This document shows positions 17,545 to 60,167 of a stretch of DNA of 64,000 nt, piece after piece (position 1 is the first letter of the stretch; every line of letters starts with the position of its first letter). The DNA is taken from positions 18,786,001 through 18,850,000 of the forward strand of contig CM106586.1 of assembly GCA_048013815.1 (NCBI GenBank). The letters are read 5' to 3'. The stretch comes from Setoptus koraiensis. Taxonomy: Eukaryota > Animalia > Arthropoda. A program made the position numbers and the translations under genes. A model generated the notes under the pieces. It was not told where the DNA came from. It worked only from the letters and a program-made list of their open reading frames with translations, and did not search any database.

Positions 17545-18228
17545 ATGTCAACACCGTCATTCGAGACGGCGTACGGGGATTCCGATGCCGATACAACACC
17601 CACAAACAGCCAACAACCACAACAATACGACGATGGTCAATTGAGGCACGCCCAAACGGGCAAAAAATTCACTTTAGCCGACTTTGAGATAGGTCGACCA
17701 TTGGGCAAGGGCAAATTTGGTAACGTTTATTTGGCTAGGACAAAGGAGGAGCAATATATCGTAGCATTGAAGGTTCTCTCGAAGAATCAGCTCATCAGGA
17801 ACAATGTTCAGCATCAATTGAGACGAGAGATCGAGATACAATCGCATCTTGAGCATGAGAACATATTGAAGATGTTTGGTTACTTTTACGACGACACACG
17901 CATCTATCTTGTATTGGAGTACGCGCCGCGTGGTGAATTGTACAAGAAGCTGAGGGACCAGAAACGCTTCGATGAACCACTGGCGGCCACCTACGTCACC
18001 CAATGTATAGAGGCATTAATTATTTGTCATTCCATGAATGTCATACATCGTGATATTAAGCCAGAGAATATTCTGTTGGGATTCCGTGGCGAAATCAAAA
18101 TAGCCGACTTTGGCTGGTCAGTTCATGCGCCATCGTCGCGTCGAACAACAATGTGCGGAACATTAGATTATTTGCCACCCGAAATGGTGCAAAGGAAGGC
18201 CTACGACAAGAACGTCGATCTCTGGTGC
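17545..18228 (+). CDS. Aurora kinase, 5' part; the C-terminus lies in the assembly gap
   Basis: First ATG at 17545. Motifs: [81 protein letters not shown]. The short N-terminus and DLWC lean towards Aurora B, while SSRRTT is Aurora A-like, so the subtype is left open. No intron in the sequenced part. Confidence 0.95.
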
Positions 18229-18728
18229 NNNNNNNNNNNNNNNNNNNNNNNNNNNNNNNNNNNNNNNNNNNNNNNNNNNNNNNNNNNNNNNNNNNNNNNN
18301 NNNNNNNNNNNNNNNNNNNNNNNNNNNNNNNNNNNNNNNNNNNNNNNNNNNNNNNNNNNNNNNNNNNNNNNNNNNNNNNNNNNNNNNNNNNNNNNNNNNN
18401 NNNNNNNNNNNNNNNNNNNNNNNNNNNNNNNNNNNNNNNNNNNNNNNNNNNNNNNNNNNNNNNNNNNNNNNNNNNNNNNNNNNNNNNNNNNNNNNNNNNN
18501 NNNNNNNNNNNNNNNNNNNNNNNNNNNNNNNNNNNNNNNNNNNNNNNNNNNNNNNNNNNNNNNNNNNNNNNNNNNNNNNNNNNNNNNNNNNNNNNNNNNN
18601 NNNNNNNNNNNNNNNNNNNNNNNNNNNNNNNNNNNNNNNNNNNNNNNNNNNNNNNNNNNNNNNNNNNNNNNNNNNNNNNNNNNNNNNNNNNNNNNNNNNN
18701 NNNNNNNNNNNNNNNNNNNNNNNNNNNN
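18229..18728. other. Assembly gap, 500 N
   Basis: Run of exactly 500 N, a round number that may be a placeholder. Confidence 0.99.
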
Positions 18729-24808: not shown

Positions 24809-25003
24809 ACCGCTCAGAACCGGAAGCTCCCCCCTTTCCAGGTCCGAAAACCATCGAAGACGATCATCTAGGTGAAGAAAGGTTCACCGAGCATCACGCT
24901 CAGGGGAGCTCCGCGTAACTCATCACCGCGGGTGCTGTGTGATCTGAATTGTATTCAGGCACACTGATCAAACTATAGAAATGATCCCTAAAAGTATGAT
25001 CTT
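24809..25003 (-). ncRNA. U3: U3 snoRNA, ~195 nt
   Basis: The minus strand begins AAGATCATACTTTTAGGGATCATTTCTATAGT (box A' TACTT, box A GGATCATTTCTATAG). It then carries box C' GTGATGA, box B GAGCGTGA, hairpin GGTGAA/TTCACC, box C GATGATCG and box D CTGA, with a terminal CCGC/GCGG stem and the stem CGGAGCTCCCC/GGGGAGCTTCCG. Confidence 0.92.
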
Positions 25004-26187: not shown

Positions 26188-27015
26188 TTAACACATAAAA
26201 GGGGGGCGCAATTTCATTTCTCCGCTCAGGCACTGAAACTCCGTGCCGGCCCAATAATCCGTCTCTTCCGAATCGATAATCACCTGCGATGCATTAATTG
26301 AATCGCAATAATCATCAGTGGTGGTTCTATCGGTCACTCGATCATTGTCACTGTTATCACTGTTGATAAGATCGCCAGATTCAAGCTTCGTTTTCTTTAG
26401 TTGCCCGTCGTCAGTATAATCAACAGCAGCATCAGCTGCGATAGAGTTGTGCTCGATAGTAGTTTTCGACGACGACGATCTCGACAATTGCTCATCAAAA
26501 TCCTGCTCATCCTGCTTGTTAGTGAGCTTACACACGGCGCGCTCCGGATGTTGACGCTTCCTCGACGATCTGCTGTTAGTCTTTCTGTTGGTGGCTTCGT
26601 CGGAGGAGCCTCTTGGCGTGTCAAGTGGATCAGTGTGGTCGTTGATAGGTGAAAATAGTTGATTAGAGGCTAGATCTGGCGCAGTTGCCTGTCGGTTGTG
26701 CTGCTGCTGCTGTTTGCCAGCGGCAGCTAGATTTTCTGCATGTTCGAAGGCAGCCCTCATTTGAAGTTCGATAGCGTTGTGCTTGTTGTTGTTTCTTGTT
26801 AAATCGTTGGCAATGTTGTCAATATCCGCTGAGTCTGACGCCCCAACAAGAGACTGGTGATTTGAATAGTCAATAGAGAGATTTTTGCCACATTGAGGGG
26901 ACCCTGTTGGCTTGCCAATGTCACTTCTATCATCGTCATCAGCGTCCAGGTCATCGTTGCGATAATCGGTGTCGTCGTCGTCGCAGTCTCGATCTTCTCG
27001 TTCGTCGTCGTCTTC

Positions 27016-27052
<37 letters not shown>

Positions 27053-30000
27053 CTCATCATCAATTGAGGCTGCTGGTGCTGCCGGTGTTTTTTAGATTGC
27101 TGGTTTATAAACATTGATTGAGAATTTTTCTCTTGGTCGCCATCGCACAATCCCTGCAAATAACGACGCTGCTGCTGCTGATGGTCAACGTAGCTCTGGT
27201 CAACTTTCAATAGTCCGCCAGACAATGGATGATGATTGGATTGGTAAGAGGGAAATAGTGAATTTGAGACTGGCAGCAGCTGCTGTTGTTGCTGGTTGTT
27301 GTTGTGGTGGTGCTGTTGTTGTTGCTGGTGATGCTGGCTCATGAGATGTGCTGCCGCCGAGGCTGCTTTAAATGGTATGGGTATGTCCAAATCTAAATTA
27401 TCGTCATAGTTAGACGAGTCATTGATAGACGACATTGGGGAGCCGGGCTCGCTGCTGCCCAGAGGCGGGTTGATGCGTTTCTCTTTTTGGCGTCTATTAC
27501 AAAACCATACTCTCACTACTTCTTTTTCCATGCACAAATTATCCGCCAGCATGGTGATATCCTCGCTAGTTGGTTTAGGATTGGCAATAAAGGCCTTCTC
27601 TAACGCCACTCTAACAGTTGTCTCAATAGAGGTTCGTTTCTTTCGCCGTCTGCCTGCAATGGCCTCGGGCGTATGATGATGCAAATGACTTGGGTGTAAC
27701 GGGTGATTGTTGTGATGGGCCCCAACTAGCGACGATGAACCGCTTGAGCCTGACATTAGCGATGAGCTTAATTGATTCAGACAGCCAGATTGTTGTGCTT
27801 GGTGCGACGACGACAATTGATTCAGCGCCATTTGGCCAGCCGGGCCGCCGGCACCAACTTTGCCGCCATTGTTTGCGCCGTTGCTATTGGGGCCGTTGTT
27901 GTTGGCCTGGCAATTGTTGTTGGCTGGGCAATTGTTGTTGTTGGCGTTGTTGTTGGTGTTGGTCACTATGGAGTTGTCGGCGTCTTGGAGCCAGCGCTGC
28001 AGCAACGGCTTCAATTTGCACATGTTCTTGAAGCTCAAATTGAGCGCCTCAAATCTCGATATGGTGGTCTGGCTGAAGTCGTTGCCGTACAGCTTGCCCA
28101 TGGCCAGTCCCACATCGCCCTGGGTGAAGCCTGGCGAGCGCATAATTGAACAAAATGGAACACAATTAGACAAATGCAAGTATAACTAATTACAGATACT
28201 AATCATTATCAATATTACTAATCATCACTTATAATATTACTCACCCAGCTTGATGCGGCGCTGCTTGAACGTCTTGGCAAACTGTTCGAGTTCCTCCAGA
28301 TCCGTCGAATCGTCCAAATTGACACAATTGCTCGCGCTAGTTGGTGTGCCGGTGACGGTGCGTTGCAGTTGTTGCTGATGCTGTTGTTGTTGGTAGTGGT
28401 GCTGATGTTTTTGTTGTTGACTCATGGCGCATAAATCGGCGGCGTTGGTGTTGCTGTTGGAACGCGTTGTTGTGAGATCAGGTGAGGACCGCTGCTCCTG
28501 TCCAGCTAATGTCAGCGCAGAGTCTGCGTTGTCTGCGCTGCTCTTGATGGAAATGGACGAATTGCATCGTTGTTGTTGCTGTTGGTTTTCTTGGTGCCTC
28601 TGTTGTTGGTCTTGGTGCTTTTGTTGTTGTCTGCCGTTATTGCCACTGTTGTCTTGCTGCTGCTGCTGCTGCTGCTGTCTGTAGTCCGAGTCGCTGGCCT
28701 GTTGCTGGCTCCTCATGCTGGCCCTGTGCAATTGTTTGTGGTTTTGTTTGTGTTGTTGTTGTTGATGGTTGTTGCCGGTGTTGTGCTGTTGTTGGCTGAA
28801 ATTTGTGGGCGATTGTTGGCTGTCGTTGGCAGCCTGTTGTTTGTGGTGCTGCTGTTGCTGTTGCTGTTGTGTCACATTTGACGAGTGACTGAACGTGTTG
28901 AATAACGCGTGCTGCTGCTGTTGTTGCTGATGATCGGTGGCCAAATTCAGTGTCTCTGTCTGTTGTAGGTGCTTGCTCATAGACGACAAATTGACGTCCG
29001 AGCCGCTGGCCGACAACGGCGATCCGTTCGCAACTTGTGACGCAATTGTGGTGGGCGTCGTGGCGCCCGTGGACACGCCGGCTGCGGCAGCAGCGGCGGC
29101 GGCCGCCGCCGCCACGGCCTGATGACCGAGGCCCAGGCCGAGGGTCGCCAAAAGGGCCGGATTAATGAGCAAGGGGGGCACCTGAATGCCGGCTTGCTGC
29201 TGCTGCGACGTTGGCGACAATTGCTGTGCCGCTTGCGGTTGTTGCTGTAGTTGTTGTAGGTGTTCCTGTTGTTGTTGTTGTTGTTGTTGTTGTTGACTTG
29301 CCAGTAGCTGCAGGGCCGGATTGGTGGCTTGCTGTAATTGTTGCTGCAGCATAACTTTGAACTGACTGTTGAGCAATTGATCGAAATTGTGCTGCTGCTG
29401 CAACGAACTCAACAATAGGTTGCCCATATTATTATTACTAACTCGATTTGGCTGCTGCTGCTGCCGGCCACCGGAAGTGTCGTCGTGCTGCTGTGGGTTG
29501 GTGTGATTATGTAATTGGTGGCTACTCAACAAATGACTGTTCTGAGCTGTCTGGGCTGTGGGGCTCGTGATGAGAGCGTTGCCTGCCATCAGGTGGCTCA
29601 GTTGCTGGCCGTTGGCTTGTTTCTTCTGTTGTTGTTGTTGTTGCTGCTGCTGCTGCTGCTGTTGTTGTTGTTGCTGAGCTAAACTGTGCAAACTTTGCTG
29701 CAGCAGACTCTGCTGAAGAAATTGCTGTACGTGCGCAGCAACAAGCGTTCGTCGATTTCGTTTATCCGTCCGTGCAGTTTGTTTGCAATTGTCGATTGTC
29801 GATTGTCAATTGTCAATTGCCAATTGTCAATTGTTTGTCAATGAGAATGCGAACGGGCGAATGGGCAAATACACAAAATGGAAACGAGAGCATGAGTTAG
29901 TCTACTGACAACAAACATCGACAATGTGACAACCAGCCAGCCCGGCATACTTGTCACTAGGCGGTCAGCGAGCGACGAGTGCATGCGAACAATTGATCAG

Positions 30001-31515
30001 AAATTTATAAATAGAGCTCCGTGTATCCGTGTGTATCAATGTGTTTGGGTACACGAGCACGATCGACGACTTGTGCTGCATCAGCGTCTTGCTGGGCGCC
30101 AATTGTCTACCGATTGTATCGCAACGGGGGCGCCAATGTTACGTTGGCGCCCATAGATACGCTCAACAATCGACAAACTCACTCGACTCGAGTGACTCGA
30201 GTATATTTGTGAGTATGTTTCAATTTGCTAATTGTTTTAGTTGCCGTTGTTGGCGAGCAGTCGCCCGCTCGAATCGCGCAATAATGTAACGCAATACGTT
30301 TACACTTTCACTGCTCACTCTAATGCGGTGACATGATTTAAAATTCAAAATTGTTGTTGTTCATAGTTGCCAGTCACGATCGCTTGTCGCATTATCGCTC
30401 GTAGCTTACGGATAAACACATAGCGATACTTGTCGTTGGCAGATTCCAACACTATTTATAGCAGCGTACCGTATGTACCCGACGAGCTCTTTAAGTGCTG
30501 ACATTTAAACGCGATCCCCCTCGCGATGCAGTGTAAAGTTTCAACTTTACTGTTTTCATTTCCACGGATATCCACACTTATCCACAGATATCCACAGAAA
30601 TCCACAGAAATCCACGGATATCCACAGAAATCAACGGATATCCACAGAAATCAACGGATATCCACAGAAATCAACGGATATCCACAGAAATCCACGGATA
30701 TCCACGAATAGCCACAGATATCCACGAATATGTGGAAGTAAACATAATTACAGGCGACTGCCGATAACAACAACACGGTATCGGTACATCACTCTCATGA
30801 TGTATTACGTGTAATGTGCAATGCGACGAATTTGTCCACTATGCGACGCATATATCGACAAATTCGAGCTTGCACTCACTCGCCGACAGATGGGGCCACT
30901 TACCTGGAATTGATTTGTGGTCACTTGCTGTTGCTGCTGTTGAGCCACTTGATGTTGTCGCTGTTGGGCCTGCTGCACTTGCATGTTGGCCTGTAAAAAT
31001 TGCATTTGCTGACTAGAGGCAAACCACTGGTGACGATGTGTTAATTAACATACATCGAGCGCATCAATTAAGAATTAATTAAGAGGGCAAAAGAGAAATT
31101 AATTAAGTAATTAGTTGATTAGAGATCAATCAGTGTTGCAGTGTTGCCAACAATAGCCAACGCTTGAATCTAACAGCGCGGGGTCACTCACCTGTGCCAA
31201 CTGGCTCAAACTGAGACCGTTCGAGGCGGCCGCCGACAACAGTTGCGTAATGGCCATCGCCGATTGTTGCTGATTGTTGTTGTTGCTGTTTGCAACTTGT
31301 TGTTGTGACGCGTTCCCGTTATTCACGTATTGCACTGATTGTTGTTGTTGTTGTTGTTGTTGTTGCTGTTGTTGTTGCTGTTTGCCCGTTGCTGCCGGCG
31401 TGGCCACTTGACTAGTTGCTAGCTGCGGCGAGCATACAGGTGAGTTAACGGGTGAACAGGTATCAACAGGTACTAGTAGTTGGTGTTTGGGTGTGCAAAT
31501 GGTTGACTGCTGCGG

Positions 31516-31553
<38 letters not shown>

Positions 31554-31740
31554 GCTGTTGTTGTTGCTGTTGTTGTTGTTGTTGACTGGCCGCTGGTGGG
31601 TGCTGTTCGGCGCCCGACGACGAGCTGGCCTCACTTTGATTAGGCGAAAACTCTTCATTTAGCCTGCACGTTGGCGATGACGTAACATTGGCCTGATTAT
31701 TTGGGGCCGGAGTGGGCGTAGTTCGCATAACCATGTTCAT
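26188..31740 (-). CDS. nub: POU class II homeodomain transcription factor (nubbin/pdm, Oct1-like); exons 31740-31192, 30990-30904, 29724-28245, 28130-26188; ~1352 aa; further 5' exons possible
   Basis: POU-specific domain [20 protein letters not shown]|[47 protein letters not shown], split by a phase-1 intron 28131-28244. The homeodomain is [21 protein letters not shown]...[22 protein letters not shown]. The linker end [15 protein letters not shown] resembles Drosophila pdm [14 protein letters not shown]. Splice phases are consistent; the N-terminal exons are less certain than the domains. Confidence 0.9.
30561..30730. repeat. Intronic minisatellite, 10/20-nt unit GGATATCCACAGAAATC(C/A)AC
   Basis: Directly visible degenerate tandem array within nub intron 2. 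Confidence 0.9.
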
Positions 31741-33635
31741 GTTTTGTTTGTGACTATGTGACACTGTTGTGTGACTATATTCTACTGTGTGACTATGCGC
31801 TGTGCTGAGGCCCGATTTTTGGAAAATTTGTGCTGAGGCGCGCGCGCGTTTCCGGTTGCACAGCTCGCGCTCGACTAGCTCGGTGGTTGACTGTGTGACT
31901 GGTTAATAAGTTGCTGATATCAATTTGTTTGTGACTTGGCGAGTGAATTTCACTTGGGCCGGCTCAATCGAGTTGTTGTGGCGGTTGCATTGAGATTGCT
32001 GCTCTCAATGGTTTGCTTATTTGCTTACACTAATGACTAGTCATGCAAAGTTATTATTAATTGGAACTTTGTTGTTGTTTGTTGTTATTGTTGTAACAAT
32101 GATTTGCGTTTCGTTGCGTAACAATGGCGGCCCAGCGTTGATGAGACGTGCGCATGGTGTGTTAATAAACCGCTATATGAATTGTGTGAATAATGTGATT
32201 GTGTTGCAAATGGCTCTTGTTGGCCGTATCATCATGGTTGTTATCTCAATTATCTCAACAATAGTCGATGTGGCTGTTAAATTGAATTGATATTTACGCG
32301 CGCGCTCTCATCGTCACTGCTAGCTCTATTGGCAGCAGCAGCAGCACGATTACGATTATTACGATTATTATTATTATTATCACTATTATGTGATTTATGT
32401 CTACTAATTAATGTGGTGACTTGGTTGTTTGCTCAATCAACGCTCGCTCGCTGCCTATCTGCGTATCTCTGCGATCACCAGGTAAAGAGCGAGCTAGCGA
32501 GAGAGAGAGAGACGTAAAATACAAATAGCTTGCAATACCAATAAAAATGTGTAGCACTCGTTAGCTTGCAAACAGTGCATTCCGCACACATACATGGATA
32601 AATAAATAAATAAATAAATGTATGTAGCTCGAGAGCGAGCGAGATGTGTTTATTATTAATTAATAATGCACCTGTACTGCTAATGATGATTATGTTGAAT
32701 TATGTCGAATGCGCTAGCTCGCCGACGGGTCGTCTTTCTATTTGCTTAATTGATATCATTAGCTGATTATATTAAACGAGCGAGGCTTCATTAAACTTTT
32801 TGATGGCTGATGGCTTAAAGTTTACGCTAGCGTATTTTGAATAGATGATGATAATAATATCGACAGTGCCGCTCGTAATATAAATATAAATAATAATACG
32901 ACGACGATTTGCGAGTTGCCCGCCGATGATATAACTATTAATGCTGCTGATAACTAATCGCACACGCACACTTACTGTATTGCAACAATATTATTATATA
33001 TTATGTATTATATATTAGTTATATTTATATTTGATTTGTTAGATGTTGTTAGACAAGCGCACAAACATTAGATTAGATTACAATATTAAATGATTTAATT
33101 CGCCCGGCAGTCAACACATTAGCTGTTGCGCAATAATGCCACTCGTAATTGTAATAATGCTACTTGTTATATTCCTGTATTCTCTCATCATACTACTTGT
33201 CGGATTCGTTGTGTAATTCGTTGTGATAATGGTGGCAACAGCGGCAACGGCGGCAACGGCAGTATTTGCAGTTGCAATGACGCGATCATCTAATGAGATA
33301 TTAATCATGACTTTAGATGCCGAGCTAGCCGACAAAACTTTGCTTTTGTACTGGCGTGCTGATCTCAATCTAGATGTGGTGGCATCATGGTTTTGCGCAC
33401 TGTGTGTCACTGTTGTCACTGTCCAGCTCGCTCTTAACTTGTCTCTTAACAGCTCGCCGAGAGGGGGCCCCCGTTTTGCTGTTCACTATTTTACCGTTGC
33501 GTTCGAATTGGCGCCGCTTGCGTTCGAATTGGCGAATTCGCTGCTTATTATCATGTCGTCGTTGTTTGCACACACACGCTGTTTGTATACGCACGGCAGC
33601 GACGCAAACGGGCTCCAAAAAACCACTGTCCGCCG

Positions 33636-33693: not shown

Positions 33694-34884
33694 GCCCACT
33701 CCGGCAGGACGGCCCTCGTTTCGAAGCCCCGTTCGCAAACTGCCCCTGCCAGCAGCGTCCTGCGAGCGCTGCCCGAAGCAGCTTAGATGCATTGGCGCGT
33801 CGATAATGCATTTGGCAGGACGGGCGCATGAGACAATTAACTGCGGATTGTTGCAGATGCTGTCATGTTATTATGCAAGCCCATACTGCTTGTGCATTGT
33901 TGTGTGCTATATGGGTATGGTATCATGATGCCAATGATTTGTTTGCCCATCAATGATGATAGAAATGTCAGCCAAATGATTTAGCATTAAATAGCGACGG
34001 AGCCATTGTGATTATATCATTGTGTGTGTGTGTGATTAGCCAACAGTGTCATTGTTAACTAACTAAAATTTATTGTCATTATTATGGTCGCGACACACGA
34101 CTAACAGCAGCCACAACAACGACAACAACGCATGCGACAACGACAACAACGCATGCGACAACAACAACACCGACAACGGCCACAATGATCACAATGACAT
34201 ACTGTTGCTGTTGTTGTTTCGTTTATTATTATTATCATGGTGATGTTGATACATATCTCATCATCATTAGTCAGATCAATTAATTAATCATCTATGCGTG
34301 AGTATTTTCGCCCGCCGCCTGCCGACTGGCGCTGCCGCTGGCTGCAAAATTCTTGTTGTTGTCTCTCCAATGAACACACTCGCTGCCGTTGCATAATCAT
34401 CATAATTGGCCACACATTGAACACACAACAAAGGCAAACTTTTTTTTTCTCTTCTTTTTTTTCATTGAGAACCTTCGCCGCCGATAATAATGATAATTAA
34501 TAAACAATCGACAATATGCAACGGCACACACAACACTGGCAACAGTGTGACTAGTCGCCGTTCTCTTTACTGCTCTGTCGATCTGTTTGGCGTAGTCGGC
34601 CAAGTGGCACAAAATAGCTAATAATGAAACCCAATGAATAGCGATAAAATGTCGCCATGACCAGGTGAGCTGACGCAATCTATATATATATCGATATATA
34701 TATATATAAATATTGCGCCATCTATTTTTAACTTTTTGTATCAGACACACTTGTTGTATCACTTTGCAGGGCGCCGTCACGTGTCTGGCCAGCGTCACTG
34801 TAATGCCCGATGTGGCTGTAGCTCAATTCGCATGCCCTCACTGGGCCGACATAATTATGTAATATAGAGCTCGCCTATAAGCCC

Positions 34885-35770
34885 ATTTGCATATGCGCAC
34901 TCGAGCACGAATATGCAAATCGGCACGCATATGCAAATCGGCACGCATATGCGCGCATAATCGTTGCGATGCAAAACAGTGCGCGAACGCCTATATGTGC
35001 CACGGGCAATCATGGCGATTGATAGAGGAGTATCGACACGAAACAAGGAAGGCGCCCACAATACAGGCGGCCCACTACGTGCCAATTTACGCTGTGCGAT
35101 ATGCAAATAGGTGCACGCAGCACGTGCTCAGTGGCACGTGAATTAGCGTCCAATGTAAAGCGTCTATAATAAAATGCGCCATGTCCGCTGCATTTGCATC
35201 TGTGCCGTGCCCACAACTGCTGGTGCCGTGTGCCATAGGTGATATGCCTATATTGCGTCATTGATTGACACGCGCACAGTGTCGCAGTGTTGCAGTTTGA
35301 AACAGTGACGCGCCGATGTTTTTTAGTCGTTGTTGCTGTTGTTGTCGTTGCTGTTGTCGTTGTTGTTGTCGTTGTTGTTGTCGTTGTTGTTGTTGCTATC
35401 AAGTGTCACATGCGCCGTCTGTGCGGCACGAGTGTTGCAGTCGGCACACGAACGCTGTCATCTTATCTCGTCCGGTGTGGTGCCGTTGTCGTGCTCATTA
35501 TTTGCCCTTATCTCTGTTTTGTCTCAGTCTATTTCGAGTCGGGCACAATTGATTTGGTGCCAATGTCCAGCGACTGAGACGACGTTGAAAACTTGAGAGA
35601 AGTTGCGTTGGCTGTGTCCATCATCAAACGCAACTTCTCGCAGTGTGTTTGGTCGGTGATGGGCGCAAAATCGTTTCGCTATTCGCTATTCGCGTTTCTC
35701 TTTTCTCAGCCGTCACACAAGTTGACGGATACGACGCGACAATGTTGACAATGCGAATGCAAATGCAAAT
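34885..35770. promoter_or_regulatory. Octamer (ATGCAAAT) site cluster, candidate POU autoregulatory enhancer
   Basis: Perfect octamers at 34885(-), 34913, 34931, 35101, 35192(-), 35757 and 35763, located 3-4 kb upstream of the nub ATG. Confidence 0.55.
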
Positions 35771-38274
35771 GGCTCACCGTGGCTCAAAAATAGAAAGTAA
35801 ACAACGAAAACAACACTGTTGCAAGTTGCAACACATTGGCCAAAGTTACATCGACAGCTAGCGCAGCGCCGGCATTGCATTGAATTTGAATACTGACCAA
35901 AATGGCACAGTTCGCACCGGAAGCGAGCGGGCGCTTCCTTCTTGGGCGTGCGTCGGGGCCGCCGCTCACCTGAGCGGCTTCTCTATTATTTTCTTGTTCT
36001 TGCTTTCACTTGGCACCTCTCACTAACTGTTTCACTAACTGTACGCTAGCTGTTATTTGCCGTGGCGGCCAGTTTTATAAGTTTCTCTCGCTCTCGCTCG
36101 TGTCTGCCATTTTATGCCGAGAAAACTTATTATTGCTCATGTCGTTGGCCGGATTATATATTGCGCAATATATATATTATTGCGAGCAGCTACTTGTTTG
36201 CGGCGCTCACTGTGACTCGCCTACTTGTGTCCGTTGTGCAATAACCTCGCTGCAACAAGCAAGATTGCGCAACAAGAATCCTGGAGAACGGGAGAAAATT
36301 TTCAGTGCGCACATTTGCTGAACCTCCGCCAAACTTCACTGTTCTGCGCCCAGTTGCGGGCCCCAATCGCGGGCCCCAGTTGCACGGCCCATGCAGGGGA
36401 TTTGCGCGTGTGCCAGTCTCATTAGCGGCTGACACGAGCAAATAAATCATATGATCAGTGGTCAATGATGCTGAAGTTGGTGGTGATTAGTGATTAATAT
36501 TAATATTAATATGAGCCGCTAGCTTATACATGTGCGCCCAAAACTCGCTTGTTGTGCCGCTCGGGGCCGCTCTGTGCGCAACTCTCAAAACTGGCCCCCA
36601 AACGCACAAAGCATGCGCGCCATTACATCCCGTGCACATCCCGTGCACGTCTCGTGCACATCTCGGGCCGCATTGCCGGGCCGCTCCGTTGACCGTTGTG
36701 TGCTCGCCAGCGGGCCCGGCCCGCCGCCAGAAGTCGCTAATTTAAATAAAACACTGCCCACGGCCCCTATTAAGTGTGCCCCGCTCACTGTGCGCCCCCC
36801 CCAATTGCCGGCGTCGTCCGGGGCCCGCTACTTATTATTATTGTTATCATTGTTGTTTCTCAATCATTCTCACAGCGATGTTAGGGGTCGCGGGCGCCCC
36901 TCTTTTATACAAAATTGAGTGCCTCTGTCCGCCGGAGCGCCCGTCTCTCTCGGCCTCTCTACGGCTCGCTGAGAAAGAACGTGCCACGATGCAAAAAAGT
37001 GGCTTAGCCACCGCGGCGCTCGTGGCGCTTATGCGCACCACACCAATCAATGATTGATGCGCTCCCATTAGCTTGTTGTTGTTGTTGCTGTTGTTGTTGT
37101 TGCTGCAGTTGGCCACTTGGAAGCACGCGCAAAAATGGCCGGCCATTCTCATTTTCATTTGGGCCCTCTTTTGGCGACTGTTATCGCGCTAGTTCTGGCC
37201 AGTTCTCGCGCTCTTTATCGCCGGTTGCGTTCGAAGGGGCCGCCAGCTCACGGTCGGTTATGATGATAACGTGCTCATCATCACACATAAAGCACACGCA
37301 CACGCTCTTACAGCTCGTGCATCTTGTGTCGCCGCGTTGCGCAACCTTTCACAAGATTTCTTGGGGCCCTCATCACCATTTCTCTCGCTCGCGTTTTCTC
37401 TTGATCGCTGGCGCCGCCAGCGGCCAAGAATGATTTAATAATGTGCAAAATGTATATACGCACTATATTGGCGTGTTTGAAATTGCCAACTTGCAGCGCC
37501 GGCCAACTATGCTAACTAGCGACATGTCGCGCAACATCGGCACAGCTCGCGTCTTGATGGGCGCACACGCACAGCATAATGGCACAATGGTATAAATGGC
37601 ACAAAATGCAACTGGCCATATCGCACGGCACGGCCGTGCGATCCAGTCGGAACACAGTGGGCCCCGTAGTGCGGCCTGACATTTCTGCTGTGCCGCTGTC
37701 TATCGTGGCTCGACCTGATGATTTAATTATGATGATCTGTCAACAATTGCTCGTTAGCCGAGGCGCTCAATTAGACCGGAGCCGACCAATATTGACCGGC
37801 AGCACCTATGTCGGCTGTTGTTGTTGTCGTTGTCGTCGTCGTCGTCGTCGTCGTCGTTGTTGTTGTTGCTGTCGTTGTTGTCGTCGTTGTTGCTGCTGCT
37901 GCCGTTGTTGTCGTTGTTGCTGTTGCTGCCGTTGTTATCGTTGGCGCTGCAAGAAAACAAACACGACGACGACGAGACCACGAGACGACTAATCATGGTC
38001 GTTAGTGGTAACTGGCGAGAAAAAGTAAACAGTATACGTGCTGCCACGTACTCCCTGTCTCTCGCATTTTGCCCTGCTCTGTCTCGCATTTTCTGGTGGC
38101 TCCCTCTCGCAGTTTCTCGTGGCTCTCTGGGCGCACAATTCGCGCTATTTGGACAATGGACGATCGCGCACAGATAGCCGGCAACGCCAACGAGAACGTG
38201 CCCGAGAGCATGCCAAAGCACTTTGTTTCGGGGCACGCCGGCGCCCCTTCAGATTTCGCCGCTGGTCGGTGCGC

Positions 38275-45700: not shown

Positions 45701-46722
45701 GCCATTTATATAAGCGGCGCTCGCGTAGCAAATGAACGCGCCAACGCCACTAGCGACAACATAAAAATTTCGAGCGATGCATTAGGTTGCGTTTTAGAGA
45801 GTCGCCGCTGGTGCTGCTGCTGGCCTTGCTATTGCCAGAAGAGATGACATTTGCGAGTTGCACGCGCTGCCATCGGTGACAGTGGCAAGTCAAGTGGGTA
45901 CGCGCCACTCGAGATGAGATGTAAATTGAGCCCGCTCGAGTCGCAAAAGTCGCTATGCTCGCTCGCCTAAGTACGCCAGCGCGCGATAATAGATAGGGGC
46001 GCTGATTAGATTTGTTGTTGGTGGCGCTGCCGGCCGTCCGGCTATCTGGCTATCGTATATCTCGCATATATATATATACGCAACAACCAGATATACGTAT
46101 ATGTGTGTGTGTTTGTCGCACCTAATCTCATCTCATTTCTTGCATGATCCCTCATTGGACGGCGCTGCGAATGTGTGCGAAAGTAGTTGCGCAAACGGCT
46201 GCTAGGGCGCACTTGGCAGCACTGGCAAGTGCGAGTGTGCGATGCCCATTGGTCGGACTGGCCCAACACAGTGTATCGTACCATCAATGGATGAATATGC
46301 CTGCTCGGCCTGTCCACTAGGTGGCCGGTGAAGTGATGCATAATGAGAGACGCAGATTGTTGTCAGTGCAGTGTCAGTCGAACGCCCACAACACGGAGCC
46401 ACTTGCTAGCACGAGAGACACGGAGATGCAATAATTTAAATAACGGTCAGCGGCACAAACAACAACGCGGACGGATGCCAAGGATTACGTAATCATTCAG
46501 AGCTAGTTGTGCGTGTCGTGTCGCGTTCGCAACTGAAACACGACAGCAACAGCAGCGGCAGCACAACAACAACAACAACAACGACAACAACAGCAACAAC
46601 CGTAACAACTCACACCAGCGCCACTGTGCAACTGCATATAGGCTTTCTATGTCCGCAGGCCTGATTATGCAATCGGTGCGATCGTCGTCGTTGTCGCTGC
46701 CGATGTTGTTGTTGCTGTTGTT

Positions 46723-46753
<31 letters not shown>

Positions 46754-48649
46754 TAGTTGTTGTCGCTGTTGTTGTTGTAGTTGTTGTTTCTGCTGCTGCT
46801 GCTGTTGCGTCACGAACACGCTGGTAATACAATCAGTGCTACTGGCCCCCGCTAATGCCTCGCTCGTCCGATTTACATGATATGATTTGAGCTGGCCTGC
46901 ATTAAAAGGACCGATTCAAGCATGTAAATCGCTGGCCCGTCTCCCATCAATTTGCGCGCGTGCTCCTCATCTCGGCCTCTTTCTTCTCCCATCCGCTCGC
47001 CTGCTCGCTTCCTTGGCCCGCAACAACAGCAACAATACGCGCACCGGCCCCCATTATTGAAACGAGCTTGGCCAAGCGGCTCAAACCGGATGGCCTATAT
47101 GGGTTGTTTTATTTTGATTTTGTTTTATTCCATTTGGCGCTTTTATCCGCGCTGCCGCTGCCACTGAACCGAACGGAACCGATCGGGGCCGGTCGGGGCC
47201 GGTCGGGGCCGGTCGGAGCCGATCGCTGGTCGGCCCGACGACGCCAAAGGGCCACTAGCGCAACCCGACGGCCACCCGACGGCCGCCCAACGGAACCAAA
47301 AAGAGGCGCACGACCACTGACCGATTGAGCGATTGAATTTAAATTAGGCAAATCGCGCACACACAACAACTGAGCGTCTCAGCAGCGAGAAATCATCAAA
47401 TCGAATTGCCTATATAAATTTATATATATATCCATCGCCAGTGGGCAGCTCCATCCAAATACAACACTCGTTGGCCCCAATTATGTATTGTATATATTAT
47501 AGGGCCAGTGGCGGGCTGGTCGTTGGCAGCACTTGACTGGGCCTATTATTACTATTATTATCATTGCTATCATCATCACCAGCGCCACTATTGATGTTAT
47601 CGAGACGCGCCAGTCACTGATGATTATGACTGATGTCCAACTGACTCGCTCTTACATAATATTTGCCAAATTGCGCGCCTATATCTGTGTTGTGCCAGCC
47701 ACATATTTGCCAAAATTCAATCCATCTCCGCGCACACAAACATTCAGTATGCCGATATCTTATTATATCGAGATATATAGATATCTATAGATAATAATAA
47801 TGCGCAATATATGCAGGCGCCCGCATCTATGCTGATAAGCGCCCCTGGTGGACATTGATTATGTAACATGGCCGGCGTGCACTGCCGCCCATGAATGACT
47901 AATGCTTGTTTACTTATATCTGGTTATAAGTCTAACCGGGCCGCCACGAGCCCCATTGGCAACCCGATGACAACGCTCAGTGCGCCAAATACAAATTGCC
48001 CAAATTTTGTCGGGCCCCAATGCACCCACCAACTGTACCTTTAGTAGTTTAGCTCGGGGCACATTGGCGTGCGGGGCATTCTCAGCTAGTGCGAACATAT
48101 ATAATGTTATGTTGTTGCCGTTTTGTCCGTGATAGGTGGCCAGTGGTGGTCAAATAATGAAAATAATCAGCCAGTCAGCTAGAAGAACTCAGCTGGCTCA
48201 GCGAGGCTAATTAACAATCAGGCTACCTCTCGCTCTCTATTGACAGCTTGCGTGAGCCTCCTCATTAGCACCTATAACGCGGCCCGATTGTTTGCGCAAA
48301 TCATTTGCTCATTCAGACATTTGTTTATTCGTCCACAGTTGGTGGGGTCGAGTGGGGCCCCTGGCGGCAGCGAGCGGTCGCTAGCTCCGGCCAACAGTCG
48401 CTAGTAACCACTGTGCCACTATTCGTTGTAGGCTGCAATCTGGCCAGCGCTGGAGTGACACTGATTTGATTGCGCAGTGTGCAGTGCCTGTGCCAAAAGG
48501 ATGTTGTGCCATGTGTTATGCAAACTGTGCAAGCTGGGGCCCGCATTACGCATTACGCAATCAGCGAGCTGGGGGCGCTCGCGTTGTGCGAGAATCAGAT
48601 TTGTTCGAGAGCTTTTGATGGCTGTTGTGCGGCCTCGAAAGTGCCATCA

Positions 48650-58652: not shown

Positions 58653-60167
58653 CTGTTGTGCTGTCCAGTGGCTGCACACCGACGGCAACTGCAGGAATTT
58701 AAAATATATAATGGATGTGCCACCGTTAGTCTACTGCCAGTCGGCTGCAAACTGCACAACGAGCCCCAAAGAGAAATAACTTTTTAGGCAATAAATTTGA
58801 AATCATCTAGCATCGAACTCGTGCGCCAATGGCCTGTCTGTAATCCCTGTAAAAAGTGGCCCACCAGGCACATTTTGGGGCGCCCGAACGGGCCCAAACT
58901 GGCAGGCATTGTGAGCGTAACAACAACAATAGTGAGCGAGCAAAGAACAGAGCAAAGAATTTGCTACAGTGGCAAAAAAAGGGGCCCCCGTTTTTCCTTG
59001 ACTGGCCCCAAAACAACACGCAGCCGGATTATTTAATTCTTGTAAAGCTCATTAACTAATGATAAGTAGCACGACACTCGCCGGGCAACGGCGCGCACTC
59101 TCTCGATATGCGGCGCGCCGTTGCCCGTTGTTGCTCGCCGGAAGCCAGTGGCCAGTGGCCAGCACAGCGGCCGAACGGTTGGCCGCAGCCGGCCACTGGT
59201 CAAGCTGGTCAAGCTGGCCACTGTCCGGCGCAGTTGTTCGGCCGGGACCGGGGGGTGGGGAGCAAAACCAAACGAGCCCCTGAAAGCAAAACGTTGTCCG
59301 TTAGTGTCGCGGCCGCTTAATCTAGAGTGGGCGCGCACAGGCTTAAAATACGCGATTTATCACGTGCTGGCGTGCTGGTTGCGTTGTTGTGTGCACGTTG
59401 TGCAGCGTTGTTGTGTGCTCGCGCCGCTTCGGTCAGCCATTGAGGGGTCACCCAATGGGCCCCCGAAAGCATTAGTGTGGGAGCGCGACAGGCTGGCTGG
59501 CTGGCTGGCCGGCCGACTGGCTGGCAACGTCGCAAAGGAGATCATAATAACCAAAAGTGACATAAGCTCATTTGTCTTGATTAAACAGACCTGTACCTAT
59601 TCTCCATTTTGCTGGCTGGGCCCCTCCAAGACGCCGCCTGTTCGGGCCTCACTCTCGCGCGTGTACGAGCAGCGAGCCAACTGAAAATATTTTCACTTTA
59701 AACCGGCCCCAAATATTCAAGCCTATATAATAAATGGGGCCCCATTGACAGCGACACTGGCCTTTGGCCACCACTAGTGGCCCGCTAGCACTTCCATTAG
59801 TAGTGCGCCACCTATGTATATCTATTATATTTATATTTATATATATTTATGAGTCACAAATTCAATTCCTTTAAAACGTCTGGCCGGCGTAATCTCGTAA
59901 AGCCCGTGCGTAGACGCCAACGCTATAGGCGCCAAGAGTATAGTGACGCTATTATAGGCACGCGCAGCGCACACAATTTGCATGTGCACGCATCAGCGCG
60001 CACTTATGCAAATGTGCGGCGCGCAACTTGCCTCGCACTTGCCTATACAAATATGCACACTGGCACAATGTCTATCGCTGTGTGCAGCGGTGCATCGAGC
60101 ATGCGCACCGATTAAAAATGGGGCCCAGAATCTGGGGCCCAGATTGAATATATTCCCGATATATGCC

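What the first reader, a model, noticed from the sequence alone, without database searches (positions are those of the whole stretch)
34885..35770. Seven perfect octamer sites in 0.9 kb upstream of the POU2 gene: candidate autoregulatory enhancer
Seen: ATGCAAAT or its reverse complement occurs at 34885, 34913, 34931, 35101, 35192, 35757 and 35763. Five fall within ~315 bp, some in a GCATATGCAAAT context that overlaps the core of the MORE palindrome (ATGCATATGCAT). By eye I find only about a dozen others scattered over the remaining 63 kb. Established: class II POU proteins (Oct1/Oct2, Nub/Pdm) bind the octamer, and MORE elements bind POU dimers. Inference: nubbin binds its own upstream enhancer in a feedback loop, partly built by an 18-nt tandem duplication (ATATGCAAATCGGCACGC). 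I am not aware of such an element being described in chelicerates.
Basis: partly seen in the sequence, partly recalled or inferred. Interest (0 to 1): 0.7.

Follow-up and report, generated by a model that had tools for sequence, protein, structure and literature searches.

The report
Octamer cluster upstream of mite POU2 gene
The densest cluster of POU-factor binding sites (ATGCAAAT) in this small mite genome lies 3-4 kb in front of a POU2/nubbin-type gene, so a feedback element is likely, but it arose largely by local duplication, is absent from other mites examined, and binding is untested.

Summary
Seven exact octamers lie at the stated coordinates, five of them within 315 bp. Local shuffles expect 0.15 and never gave more than 3.

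The genome-wide rate is 0.145 per kb, close to the dinucleotide expectation. Listing all octamer triples in the 48.8-Mb genome makes this the densest cluster: 7 in 900 bp against 5 for the runner-up.

It lies 3.1-4.0 kb 5' of the first ATG of a minus-strand class II POU gene. That gene's POU-specific domain is identical to human Oct-1 over the aligned stretch.

Qualifications:
- The seven sites are only 3-5 independent events: a 22+22-nt palindrome, an 18-nt tandem repeat and an AATGCA microsatellite.
- The gene is one of three tandem POU2 paralogues with identical DNA-binding domains, so self- and cross-regulation cannot be separated. Only this paralogue has the cluster.
- Six other mite nubbin loci show no such cluster, and no close relative was available.
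- No RNA evidence was obtainable, so enhancer and promoter-proximal readings both remain open.

The core also holds three MORE cores (GCATATGC) and three CACGTG E-boxes.

Verdict: probably a lineage-specific POU-responsive regulatory module, and a new member of a known kind. Binding and function are inferred, not shown.

The parts
34885..34892 (-). Exact octamer 1, the left arm of the palindrome. With its flank it reads GCATATGCAAAT on the minus strand.
34913..34920 (+). Exact octamer 2, the right arm of the palindrome and first copy of the 18-nt tandem unit.
34931..34938 (+). Exact octamer 3, second copy of the 18-nt tandem unit, in a GCATATGCAAAT context.
35101..35108 (+). Exact octamer 4. 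Its flanks are loosely related to the repeat unit. Two CACGTG E-boxes follow within 40 nt.
   Evidence: (D5, D12, I17)
35192..35199 (-). Exact octamer 5, a singleton with unrelated flanks.
35757..35770 (+). Exact octamers 6 and 7, overlapping by two bases inside an (AATGCA)3.7 microsatellite at 35750-35771. They count as one mutational event.
34881..34924 (.). Palindrome of 22+22 nt, 82% complementary, centred on CTCGAG, with an octamer in each arm facing outward.
   Evidence: I1. Folds as a hairpin in single-stranded DNA, z -3.2 and -4.2.
34905..34952 (+). Tandem array with an 18-nt period, 2.7 copies, 96% matches. The third, partial copy keeps the GCATATGC core but not the octamer.
   Evidence: (D3, D4)
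34889..34952 (.). Three copies of the MORE core palindrome GCATATGC, at 34889-34896, 34927-34934 and 34945-34952. Each has two inverted ATGC subsites at MORE spacing, but the flanks differ from the exact MORE by 2-4 bases.
   Evidence: 3 here, 0 in the other 153 kb; 525 genome-wide
34778..35140 (.). Three CACGTG E-boxes at 34778, 35121 and 35135, co-enriched with the octamers in the 0.5-kb core.
   Evidence: 3 observed, 0.09 expected from the 154-kb locus
35329..35395 (+). (GTT)n microsatellite between the two groups of octamers. This is the only part of the region that recurs elsewhere in the genome.
34860..34867 (-). TATA-like CTATATTA on the gene's strand, about 20 nt 3' of octamer 1. It is a candidate promoter-proximal arrangement and is unverified.
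   Evidence: read directly; inference only
59976..60013 (.). Second outward-facing inverted octamer pair with a 22-nt GCGCAC-rich spacer, about 28 kb 5' of the gene.
   Evidence: only 23 such pairs in the genome, 2 of them in this intergenic region
31126..31740 (-). First recognisable coding segment of POU2 paralogue A. The first in-frame ATG is at 31740, in the context caaaacATGa, preceded by AGTCACAC repeats at about 31750-31900. The 3' boundary is only the end of the open frame; the splice donor was not mapped.
26188..29691 (-). Remaining coding segments of POU2 paralogue A: a Q-rich segment ending in the start of the POU-specific domain (open frame 29691-28237), a short intron of about 100 nt, then the rest of POU-S, a linker of about 100 aa, the homeodomain and a C-terminal tail (to 26188).

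Best explanation
The stretch 34.78-35.77 kb is a lineage-specific cluster of high-affinity POU sites that acts as a cis-regulatory module for the adjacent class II POU gene (paralogue A). Its 0.5-kb core holds five exact octamers, three MORE-type GCATATGC cores and three CACGTG E-boxes. An outlying double octamer lies 560 bp further 5'.

The module was built by amplifying one composite unit of roughly GCGCATATGCAAAT: first an inverted duplication (the palindrome), then an 18-nt tandem duplication. At least two independent octamers and a microsatellite-borne pair were added.

The proteins most likely to occupy it are the three POU2 paralogues A, B and C, whose DNA-binding domains are identical in protein sequence. 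That would give A positive or negative feedback from itself and cross-talk from B and C. A bHLH factor at the E-boxes could supply context.

Shown: the sites, their density, their genome-wide rank, their position relative to the gene, and the identity of the DNA-contacting domain to Oct-1. Inferred: binding, the target gene, the sign of regulation, and whether the module is an upstream enhancer or a promoter-proximal element.
For: - Density: 7 sites against 0.15 expected locally, with a maximum of 3 in 2000 shuffles.
- Background: the genome-wide rate of 0.145 per kb is close to the dinucleotide expectation, so there is no general octamer bias to explain it.
- Rank: among all triples of octamers in any orientation with gaps <=400 nt (85 matches), this locus is the only one in all four lists. 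The fetched rivals have at most 5 sites per 900 bp.
- Location: the top cluster of a 48.8-Mb genome falls within 4 kb of one of three class II POU genes. The 30 kb lying within 10 kb 5' of those genes is 0.06% of the genome.
- Unbiased ranking: ATGCAAAT is the most repeated 8-mer in the 1-kb stretch. It ranks 43 of 19,303 in the A-B intergenic region (23 observed, 4.1 Markov-expected) and still 129th without the cluster. In the left flank it ranks 1648th.
- Locus level: 47 octamers in 154 kb against 21.3 +/- 4.4 in block-wise shuffles, maximum 33. Two of the genome's 23 outward inverted pairs lie in A's upstream region.
- Co-enrichment: GCATATGC and CACGTG are enriched with the octamers, as expected of a composite module.
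- Not a repeat: the region is single-copy apart from the (GTT)n microsatellite.
- Protein: POU-S is identical to Oct-1 and the homeodomain recognition helix is identical.
- Precedents: Drosophila Nub binds ATGCAAAT and acts through a cluster of six Oct sites in the CecA1 promoter, and nub-RD overexpression lowers nub-RB (PMC5851638). Oct-1 autoregulates through two octa-sites (Pankratova 2006, cited in PMC6057458).
Against: - Four or five of the seven sites come from local duplication or microsatellite slippage. With only 3-4 independent origins the local excess is much less extreme. About 28 loci in the genome carry three same-strand octamers.
- No comparable cluster lies 5' of paralogues B or C.
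- None lies within 8-10 kb 5' of nubbin in Fragariocoptes, Halotydeus, Dermatophagoides, Panonychus, Blomia or Dinothrombium. Fragariocoptes, the nearest named relative found, has no octamer at all in 21 kb.
- Upstream DNA cannot be aligned between species.
- The twofold locus-level enrichment is shared by another factor-like word: TTACGTAA has 20 sites against 10.3 by the genome rate. It may partly reflect noncoding versus coding DNA in a compact genome.
- There is no transcript, accessibility or binding evidence.
Confidence: 0.5

Rival explanations
1. Neutral by-product of local sequence turnover. A single chance octamer in a palindrome- and slippage-prone stretch was copied by inverted and tandem duplication, and an AATGCA microsatellite happens to spell two more. 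The cluster has no regulatory role, and its position next to a POU gene is coincidence.
For: - The palindrome, the 18-nt tandem array and the microsatellite account for 5 of the 7 sites.
- Other tandem-repeat-borne clusters of 3-5 octamers exist elsewhere, and one is simply polyubiquitin coding sequence.
- There is no conservation in six mites or at the paralogues.
Against: - The densest cluster in 48.8 Mb would have to land by chance in the 0.06% of the genome just 5' of a class II POU gene.
- Two further singleton octamers with unrelated flanks (35101, 35192) lie within 300 bp.
- Octamers are also about twofold enriched across the rest of the locus, where they are not duplicates.
- E-boxes are co-enriched.
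Confidence: 0.25
2. A functional POU-site module that is not autoregulatory. It is read by another POU class (the genome has at least four further POU loci) or only by paralogues B and C, or it acts on a gene other than A.
For: - Several POU classes bind the octamer (established knowledge).
- One search finds further POU-domain loci at C1:11.79 Mb, C2:22.72 Mb, C1:5.18 Mb (a pair) and C1:2.07 Mb.
- B and C have the same DNA-binding domain as A.
- A's 5' intergenic region runs up to the 3' end of B.
Against: - A is the nearest gene and the only one whose 5' end faces the cluster.
- The ten largest ORFs in 32-64 kb have no credible Pfam domain.
- Exact ATGCAAAT is the optimum for class II factors (established knowledge).
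- Nothing here excludes this reading. It overlaps with the best explanation wherever B and C contribute.
Confidence: 0.15
3. The five-site core is the proximal promoter of paralogue A rather than a distal enhancer. Transcription would start near 34.83 kb, about 30 nt 3' of a TATA-like CTATATTA that follows octamer 1. This is the octamer-TATA arrangement of immunoglobulin and histone H2B promoters (from my own knowledge, not checked in a paper here), and the leader would be about 3 kb long or spliced.
For: - On the gene's strand the order is octamer, about 20 nt, then a TATA-like box.
- The known arthropod Oct-site cluster, in CecA1, is promoter-proximal at -336 to -150 (PMC5851638).
Against: - AGTCACAC repeats resembling arthropod core-promoter Motif 1 lie directly 5' of the ATG at 31740, which suggests a start near 31.8-31.9 kb instead.
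- The TATA-like box is weak, and TATA-like words also occur on the plus strand.
- No transcript data are available.
Confidence: 0.2

Closest known systems
Oct-1 (POU2F1) autoregulation through two octamer sites in its alternative promoter (Pankratova et al. 2006, Biochimie; cited as ref. 55 in PMC6057458)
   Same: A class II POU gene carries consensus octamers for its own product in its 5' regulatory DNA. The DNA-binding domain here is essentially that of Oct-1.
   Different: Here there are seven exact sites rather than two, built by palindromic and tandem duplication. Three paralogues share the DNA-binding domain. The position relative to the transcription start is unknown, and there is no binding or reporter evidence.
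Oct-site cluster of the Drosophila CecA1 promoter, read by Nubbin isoforms (PMC5851638)
   Same: A homotypic cluster of about six Oct or Oct-like sites within about 200-300 bp, acted on by the arthropod POU2 orthologue.
   Different: The target there is an immune effector gene, not the POU gene itself, and that cluster mixes consensus and degenerate sites. Here all seven are exact, and only four one-mismatch variants occur in 34.4-36.3 kb.
Autoregulatory enhancers of other POU classes: Pit-1 (Rhodes et al. 1993, cited in PMC9953854) and Brn3a (Trieu et al. 2003, cited in PMC3792956). Also unc-86, drifter/vvl and Oct4, from my own knowledge and not checked here.
   Same: Multiple sites for the encoded POU factor lie kilobases 5' of its own gene and give feedback or dosage compensation.
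   Different: Those elements are conserved among related species and experimentally validated, and they use class-specific site variants. This cluster is lineage-specific and untested.
MORE (ATGCATATGCAT) POU-dimer element. Tomilin et al. 2000 and Remenyi et al. 2001, from my own knowledge.
   Same: The central GCATATGC palindrome, with two inverted ATGC POU-S subsites at MORE spacing, occurs three times. Two of them are fused to a full octamer, much as in the VH-promoter heptamer/octamer (ATGAATATGCAAAT), which 34907-34920 matches with one mismatch.
   Different: There is no exact MORE. The 12-mers differ from it by 2-4 bases at the outer positions. Dimer binding is untested.

Membership tests
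Class II POU (Oct-1/Oct-2/Nubbin) gene: the neighbouring gene | Bipartite POU-specific domain plus POU homeodomain | tested here: met
   Pfam Pou 87.6 bits and Homeodomain 64.7 bits, with the start of Pou on the preceding exon.
Class II POU (Oct-1/Oct-2/Nubbin) gene: the neighbouring gene | Closest to class II rather than classes I, III, V or VI | tested here: met
   PDB ranking: Oct-1, Oct-2 and POU2F3 at 190-202 bits, class III at 168, class V at 138, Pit-1 at 118, class VI at 79. The best named database hits are nubbin/POU2F proteins.
Class II POU (Oct-1/Oct-2/Nubbin) gene: the neighbouring gene | Octamer-contacting residues conserved | tested here: met
   POU-S is identical to 1OCT over the aligned stretch, and the recognition helix [15 protein letters not shown] is identical. 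Binding itself was not tested.
POU autoregulatory element | Consensus sites for the encoded factor in the gene's own regulatory DNA, above background | tested here: met
   7 exact octamers 3.1-4.0 kb 5' of the ATG. This is the densest cluster in the genome.
POU autoregulatory element | The factor occupies the sites in vitro or in vivo | not testable with these tools
   Needs EMSA, ChIP or CUT&RUN.
POU autoregulatory element | The gene's expression, or a reporter, depends on the sites and on the factor itself | not testable with these tools
   Needs reporter and knock-down experiments. Three paralogues with identical DNA-binding domains complicate assignment.
POU autoregulatory element | Conservation of the sites in related species or paralogues | tested here: not met
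   No cluster at six other mite nubbin loci or 5' of paralogues B and C. Those species are too distant for noncoding alignment and no close relative was found, so this argues for a lineage-specific element rather than against function.
MORE POU-dimer site | 12-bp palindrome ATGCATATGCAT | tested here: not met
   No exact MORE. The best matches in the module have 2 mismatches. Only the 8-bp core GCATATGC is present, three times.
Transposon or dispersed repeat | Multiple copies in the genome | tested here: not met
   Only the (GTT)n part of 34800-35800 matches elsewhere in the genome.
Structured RNA gene | Match to a curated RNA family | tested here: not met
   Rfam at gathering thresholds finds only a U3 snoRNA at 24809-25003 and nothing in the cluster.

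The most novel reading that the evidence does not exclude
After an old triplication of POU2, one paralogue (A, which also has an unusually long linker of about 100 aa between its POU subdomains) acquired a private high-gain input. This happened by palindromic and tandem amplification of a composite MORE/octamer unit, which created the strongest POU-site cluster in the genome. Because all three paralogues keep identical DNA-binding domains, the module would sense the total POU2 dose and feed it into A alone. That would be a newly evolved paralogue-summing feedback or dosage-compensation switch, caught at an early, non-conserved stage of enhancer birth.
Probability: 0.15. Interest if true: 0.6.

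Novelty: new member of a known kind. Interest (0 to 1): 0.38.

Why it matters
POU factors that regulate their own genes are well known (Oct-1, Pit-1, Brn3a). A mite example would extend the principle rather than overturn it.

Three things make this case useful:
- It is clean. Seven perfect sites form the top-ranked cluster in a very small genome, next to a gene whose DNA-binding domain is essentially that of Oct-1.
- Its mode of origin can be read directly from the sequence: inverted plus tandem duplication of one composite site.
- It is specific to one of three paralogues that share a DNA-binding domain.

It is therefore a tractable case for studying how homotypic site clusters and feedback loops arise after gene duplication. 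It also gives a defined 90-bp fragment for testing monomer versus MORE-type dimer binding by a long-linker POU protein.

Tried and rejected
- Transposon or repeat origin: rejected. Only the (GTT)n microsatellite recurs in the genome.
- General octamer or TGCA bias: rejected. The genome rate is 0.145 per kb against 0.133 per kb from window shuffles.
- A 121-bp, 82% match between A's and B's far-upstream DNA (46684-46801 against locus position 102847): examined as a possible conserved element or shared 5' exon. Rejected as a CAG/CAA microsatellite with dozens of genomic copies.
- Noncoding alignment with Fragariocoptes setiger: only POU and homeodomain coding DNA aligns.
- Search for close relatives with the fast-evolving C-terminal tail: no hit, possibly because low-complexity words swamped the candidates.
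- Octamer content around the other POU genes of this genome: not done.
- One rival locus (C2:10298-10347, four octamers in 50 bp) was missed through my own coordinate slip. It appears only in the same-strand lists, so it cannot reach seven sites.
- Rfam: nothing in the cluster.
- Pfam on the ten largest ORFs of 32-64 kb: nothing credible.
- Drosophila pdm-locus enhancer papers (PMC4574355, PMC6175444): neither mentions octamers or autoregulation of nub/pdm2.
- Gene model: examined exon by exon by reference.

Full report
**Observation.** One search finds ATGCAAAT or its complement at 34885(-), 34913(+), 34931(+), 35101(+), 35192(-), 35757(+) and 35763(+). Five sites fall within 315 bp. The window total of 19 compares with 8.1 +/- 2.8 in dinucleotide-preserving shuffles. 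Shuffling 34885-35770 alone gives 0.15 sites on average and never more than 3 in 2000 trials. In 200 whole-window shuffles no 900-bp span held more than 3. The genome holds 7,065 octamers in 48.76 Mb, or 0.145 per kb. That is close to the 0.133 per kb expected from dinucleotide content, so a general TGCA or octamer bias does not explain the cluster.

**Anatomy and origin.** The seven sites are not seven independent events.
- Positions 34881-34924 form a 22+22-nt palindrome, 82% complementary, centred on CTCGAG. Each arm carries one outward-facing octamer (I1).
- Positions 34905-34952 are an 18-nt tandem array of 2.7 copies.
- The site at 35101 has loosely related flanks.
- Sites 35757 and 35763 overlap inside an (AATGCA)3.7 microsatellite.
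- Only 35192 and, arguably, 35101 are clear singletons.

The number of independent origins is therefore 3-5.

The repeated unit is a composite. The MORE core palindrome GCATATGC occurs three times within 64 bp (34889, 34927, 34945). It occurs nowhere else in the 154-kb locus and only 525 times in the genome. No exact MORE is present; the best 12-mers have two mismatches. The 0.5-kb core also holds three CACGTG E-boxes against 0.09 expected. In an unbiased count, ATGCAAAT is the most repeated 8-mer in 34800-35800, tied only with a microsatellite word. The region is single-copy apart from a (GTT)n microsatellite at 35329-35395. Rfam finds nothing there.

**Gene context.** The POU gene runs on the minus strand. 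Its open segments are 31764-31126 (first in-frame ATG at 31740), 29691-28237 and 28179-26188. Pfam finds Pou and Homeodomain. Against solved structures, the POU-specific domain is identical to human Oct-1 over the aligned stretch, and the homeodomain recognition helix is identical too. Class II chains score above classes III, V, I and VI. The cluster therefore lies 3.1-4.0 kb 5' of the first ATG of a class II POU gene that should bind the octamer. That last step is an inference from sequence identity.

I examined the gene model exon by exon, by reference. I neither built nor searched a joined protein.

The nearest named relative of the protein is nubbin of the eriophyoid mite Fragariocoptes setiger. 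The genome is 48.8 Mb in two contigs of about 24 Mb each. I take the organism to be an eriophyoid-like mite, but this is not proven.

**Three paralogues.** A whole-genome Pfam search found three class II POU genes in tandem on the minus strand, at C2:18.814 (this one, A), 18.874 (B) and 18.900 Mb (C).
- B and C are a 5.4-kb duplicate pair at 88% identity.
- All three encode identical POU-specific and homeodomain protein sequences, although the DNA is only 84-86% identical. This points to strong purifying selection and identical DNA specificity.
- 'Autoregulation' therefore cannot be separated from cross-regulation among the paralogues.
- No dense cluster lies 5' of B or C.
- A's upstream DNA shows no similarity to theirs. 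One 121-bp match proved to be a CAG/CAA microsatellite.
- The ten largest ORFs in 32-64 kb have no credible Pfam domain. This fits a regulatory desert of about 50 kb between A and B, which is large for so compact a genome.

**Genome-wide rank.** I listed every triple of octamers with both gaps <=400 nt.

| Orientation classes | Matches |
|---|---|
| Same strand | 31, at about 28 loci |
| Three mixed-orientation classes | 19, 16 and 19 |
| Total | 85 |

Any cluster of seven sites in 900 bp must contain such a triple. This locus is the only one present in all four lists. I fetched 27 of the same-strand loci and counted both strands.

| Locus | Octamers in the best 900 bp |
|---|---|
| This cluster | 7 |
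| Runner-up (a tandem 24-mer) | 5 |
| All other fetched loci | 4 or fewer |

One rival is simply polyubiquitin coding sequence, where ATGCAAAT encodes Met-Gln-Ile. The mixed-orientation rivals work out from their coordinates to about four sites each.

The densest exact-octamer cluster in the genome therefore sits just 5' of one of three POU2 genes. The 30 kb lying within 10 kb 5' of those genes is about 0.06% of the genome. This is the strongest argument that the association is not a coincidence.

The tool notes that its counts are lower bounds. One rival (C2:10298) was not fetched because of my own coordinate slip. It appears only in the same-strand lists, with four sites.

**Locus-level enrichment.**
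- The 154 kb spanning A, B and C holds 47 octamers against 21.3 +/- 4.4 in block-wise shuffles, maximum 33.
- The A-B intergenic region holds 23 against 7.7 by the genome rate, and 16 against 7.5 without the cluster.
- Against a third-order Markov background, ATGCAAAT ranks 43rd of 19,303 8-mers there. It ranks 129th without the cluster and only 1648th in the left flank.
- Only 23 outward-facing inverted pairs with 10-40-nt spacers exist in the genome, and two of them lie in A's upstream region.

One caveat applies. TTACGTAA is also about twofold enriched over its genome rate in this locus. Part of the effect may be a general property of regulatory noncoding DNA in a gene-dense genome.

**Comparative evidence.** The Fragariocoptes contig has 8.1 kb of DNA 5' of its nubbin gene and no octamer at all in 21 kb, against 3.4 expected. 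Only coding DNA aligns with the window. Nubbin loci of Halotydeus, Dermatophagoides, Panonychus, Blomia and Dinothrombium, each with 9-10 kb of upstream DNA, carry octamers at shuffle expectation, with at most two in any 900 bp. A search with the fast-evolving C-terminal tail found no closer relative. The cluster is therefore lineage-specific as far as can be seen. The test that matters, in sister species, could not be run.

**Mechanism.** The best-supported reading (about 0.5) is a POU-responsive cis-regulatory module for paralogue A. It would be occupied by the POU2 proteins A, B and/or C, possibly as dimers on the GCATATGC-containing units and together with a bHLH factor at the E-boxes. The result would be feedback on A. 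The sign of the loop is unknown.

Whether the module is a distal enhancer or the proximal promoter is open.
- AGTCACAC repeats resembling arthropod core-promoter Motif 1 precede the ATG at 31740.
- A TATA-like CTATATTA follows octamer 1 by about 20 nt on the gene's strand.

Transcript evidence could not be obtained. I did not pursue it by other means, and no places were reported as human-like.

The rivals are:
- neutral duplication debris (0.25);
- a module read by other POU classes or serving another gene (0.15);
- the promoter-proximal variant (0.2), which overlaps with the best explanation.

**Comparison with known systems.**
- Oct-1 autoregulates through two octa-sites in an alternative promoter (Pankratova 2006, cited in PMC6057458).
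- Drosophila Nub binds the canonical octamer and acts through a cluster of six Oct sites at -336 to -150 of CecA1. Overexpressing nub-RD lowers nub-RB 2.4-fold (PMC5851638).
- Pit-1 and Brn3a have validated autoregulatory enhancers (references within PMC9953854 and PMC3792956).
- Two detailed dissections of the Drosophila nub/pdm2 enhancers do not mention octamers.
- A search for nubbin cis-regulation in chelicerates found nothing relevant.

If functional, this is a new member of a known kind. It is notable for the perfection and number of its sites, its visible origin by duplication, and its restriction to one of three paralogues.

Noticed in passing
window 26188-31764 (A); G000:C2:18871000-18877000 (B; loci L023, L014); G000:C2:18897500-18903000 (C; loci L025-L026, L013): Three class II POU genes lie in tandem on the minus strand. 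Their POU-specific and homeodomain protein sequences are identical, although the DNA is only 84-86% identical. B and C are a 5.4-kb duplicate pair at 88% identity, with an inverted fragment of about 280+145 bp just 5' of B.
   Followed up: partly
window 24809-25003 (-): A U3 snoRNA gene (Rfam RF00012, 106 bits, full length) lies about 1.2 kb 3' of the POU gene's stop codon.
   Followed up: no
window 32001-64000 and loci L021-L029: Other factor-site-like 8-mers are strongly over-represented in the POU2 locus against a Markov background: TTACGTAA/GTTACGTA (PAR-bZIP-type palindrome, 20 against 0.7, though 10.3 by the genome rate), CAGGTAG/CAGGTGA (Zelda- or Snail-like) and TGGTCAGT. This suggests a dense regulatory landscape.
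   Followed up: partly
window 59976-60013: A second outward-facing inverted octamer pair with a GCGCAC-rich 22-nt spacer, one of only 23 such pairs in the genome. Several of the others are also extended palindromes with the octamers at their outer ends.
   Followed up: partly
window 31750-31900 (-): Four or five AGTCACAC/AGTCACAA words and two CTCAGCAC words lie directly 5' of the first ATG of the POU gene. They resemble arthropod core-promoter Motif 1 and Inr-like elements and may mark the transcription start.
   Followed up: no
window 17769-18728 and L029 9541-10000: A 500-N assembly gap at 18229-18728 is flanked by 460 bp that recur, inverted and at 99.8% identity, about 135 kb away at the far end of the POU2 locus. 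This may be a repeat or an assembly feature.
   Followed up: no
window 35738-35770: Two ACAATG (Sox-core-like) words lie directly 5' of the double octamer. Their orientation differs from the canonical Sox-Oct composite.
   Followed up: no
G000:C1:14206017-14206480 (L039): An evenly spaced octamer triple with a 228-bp period is polyubiquitin coding sequence (ATGCAAATC encodes Met-Gln-Ile). This shows that some octamer clusters are coding by-products.
   Followed up: yes
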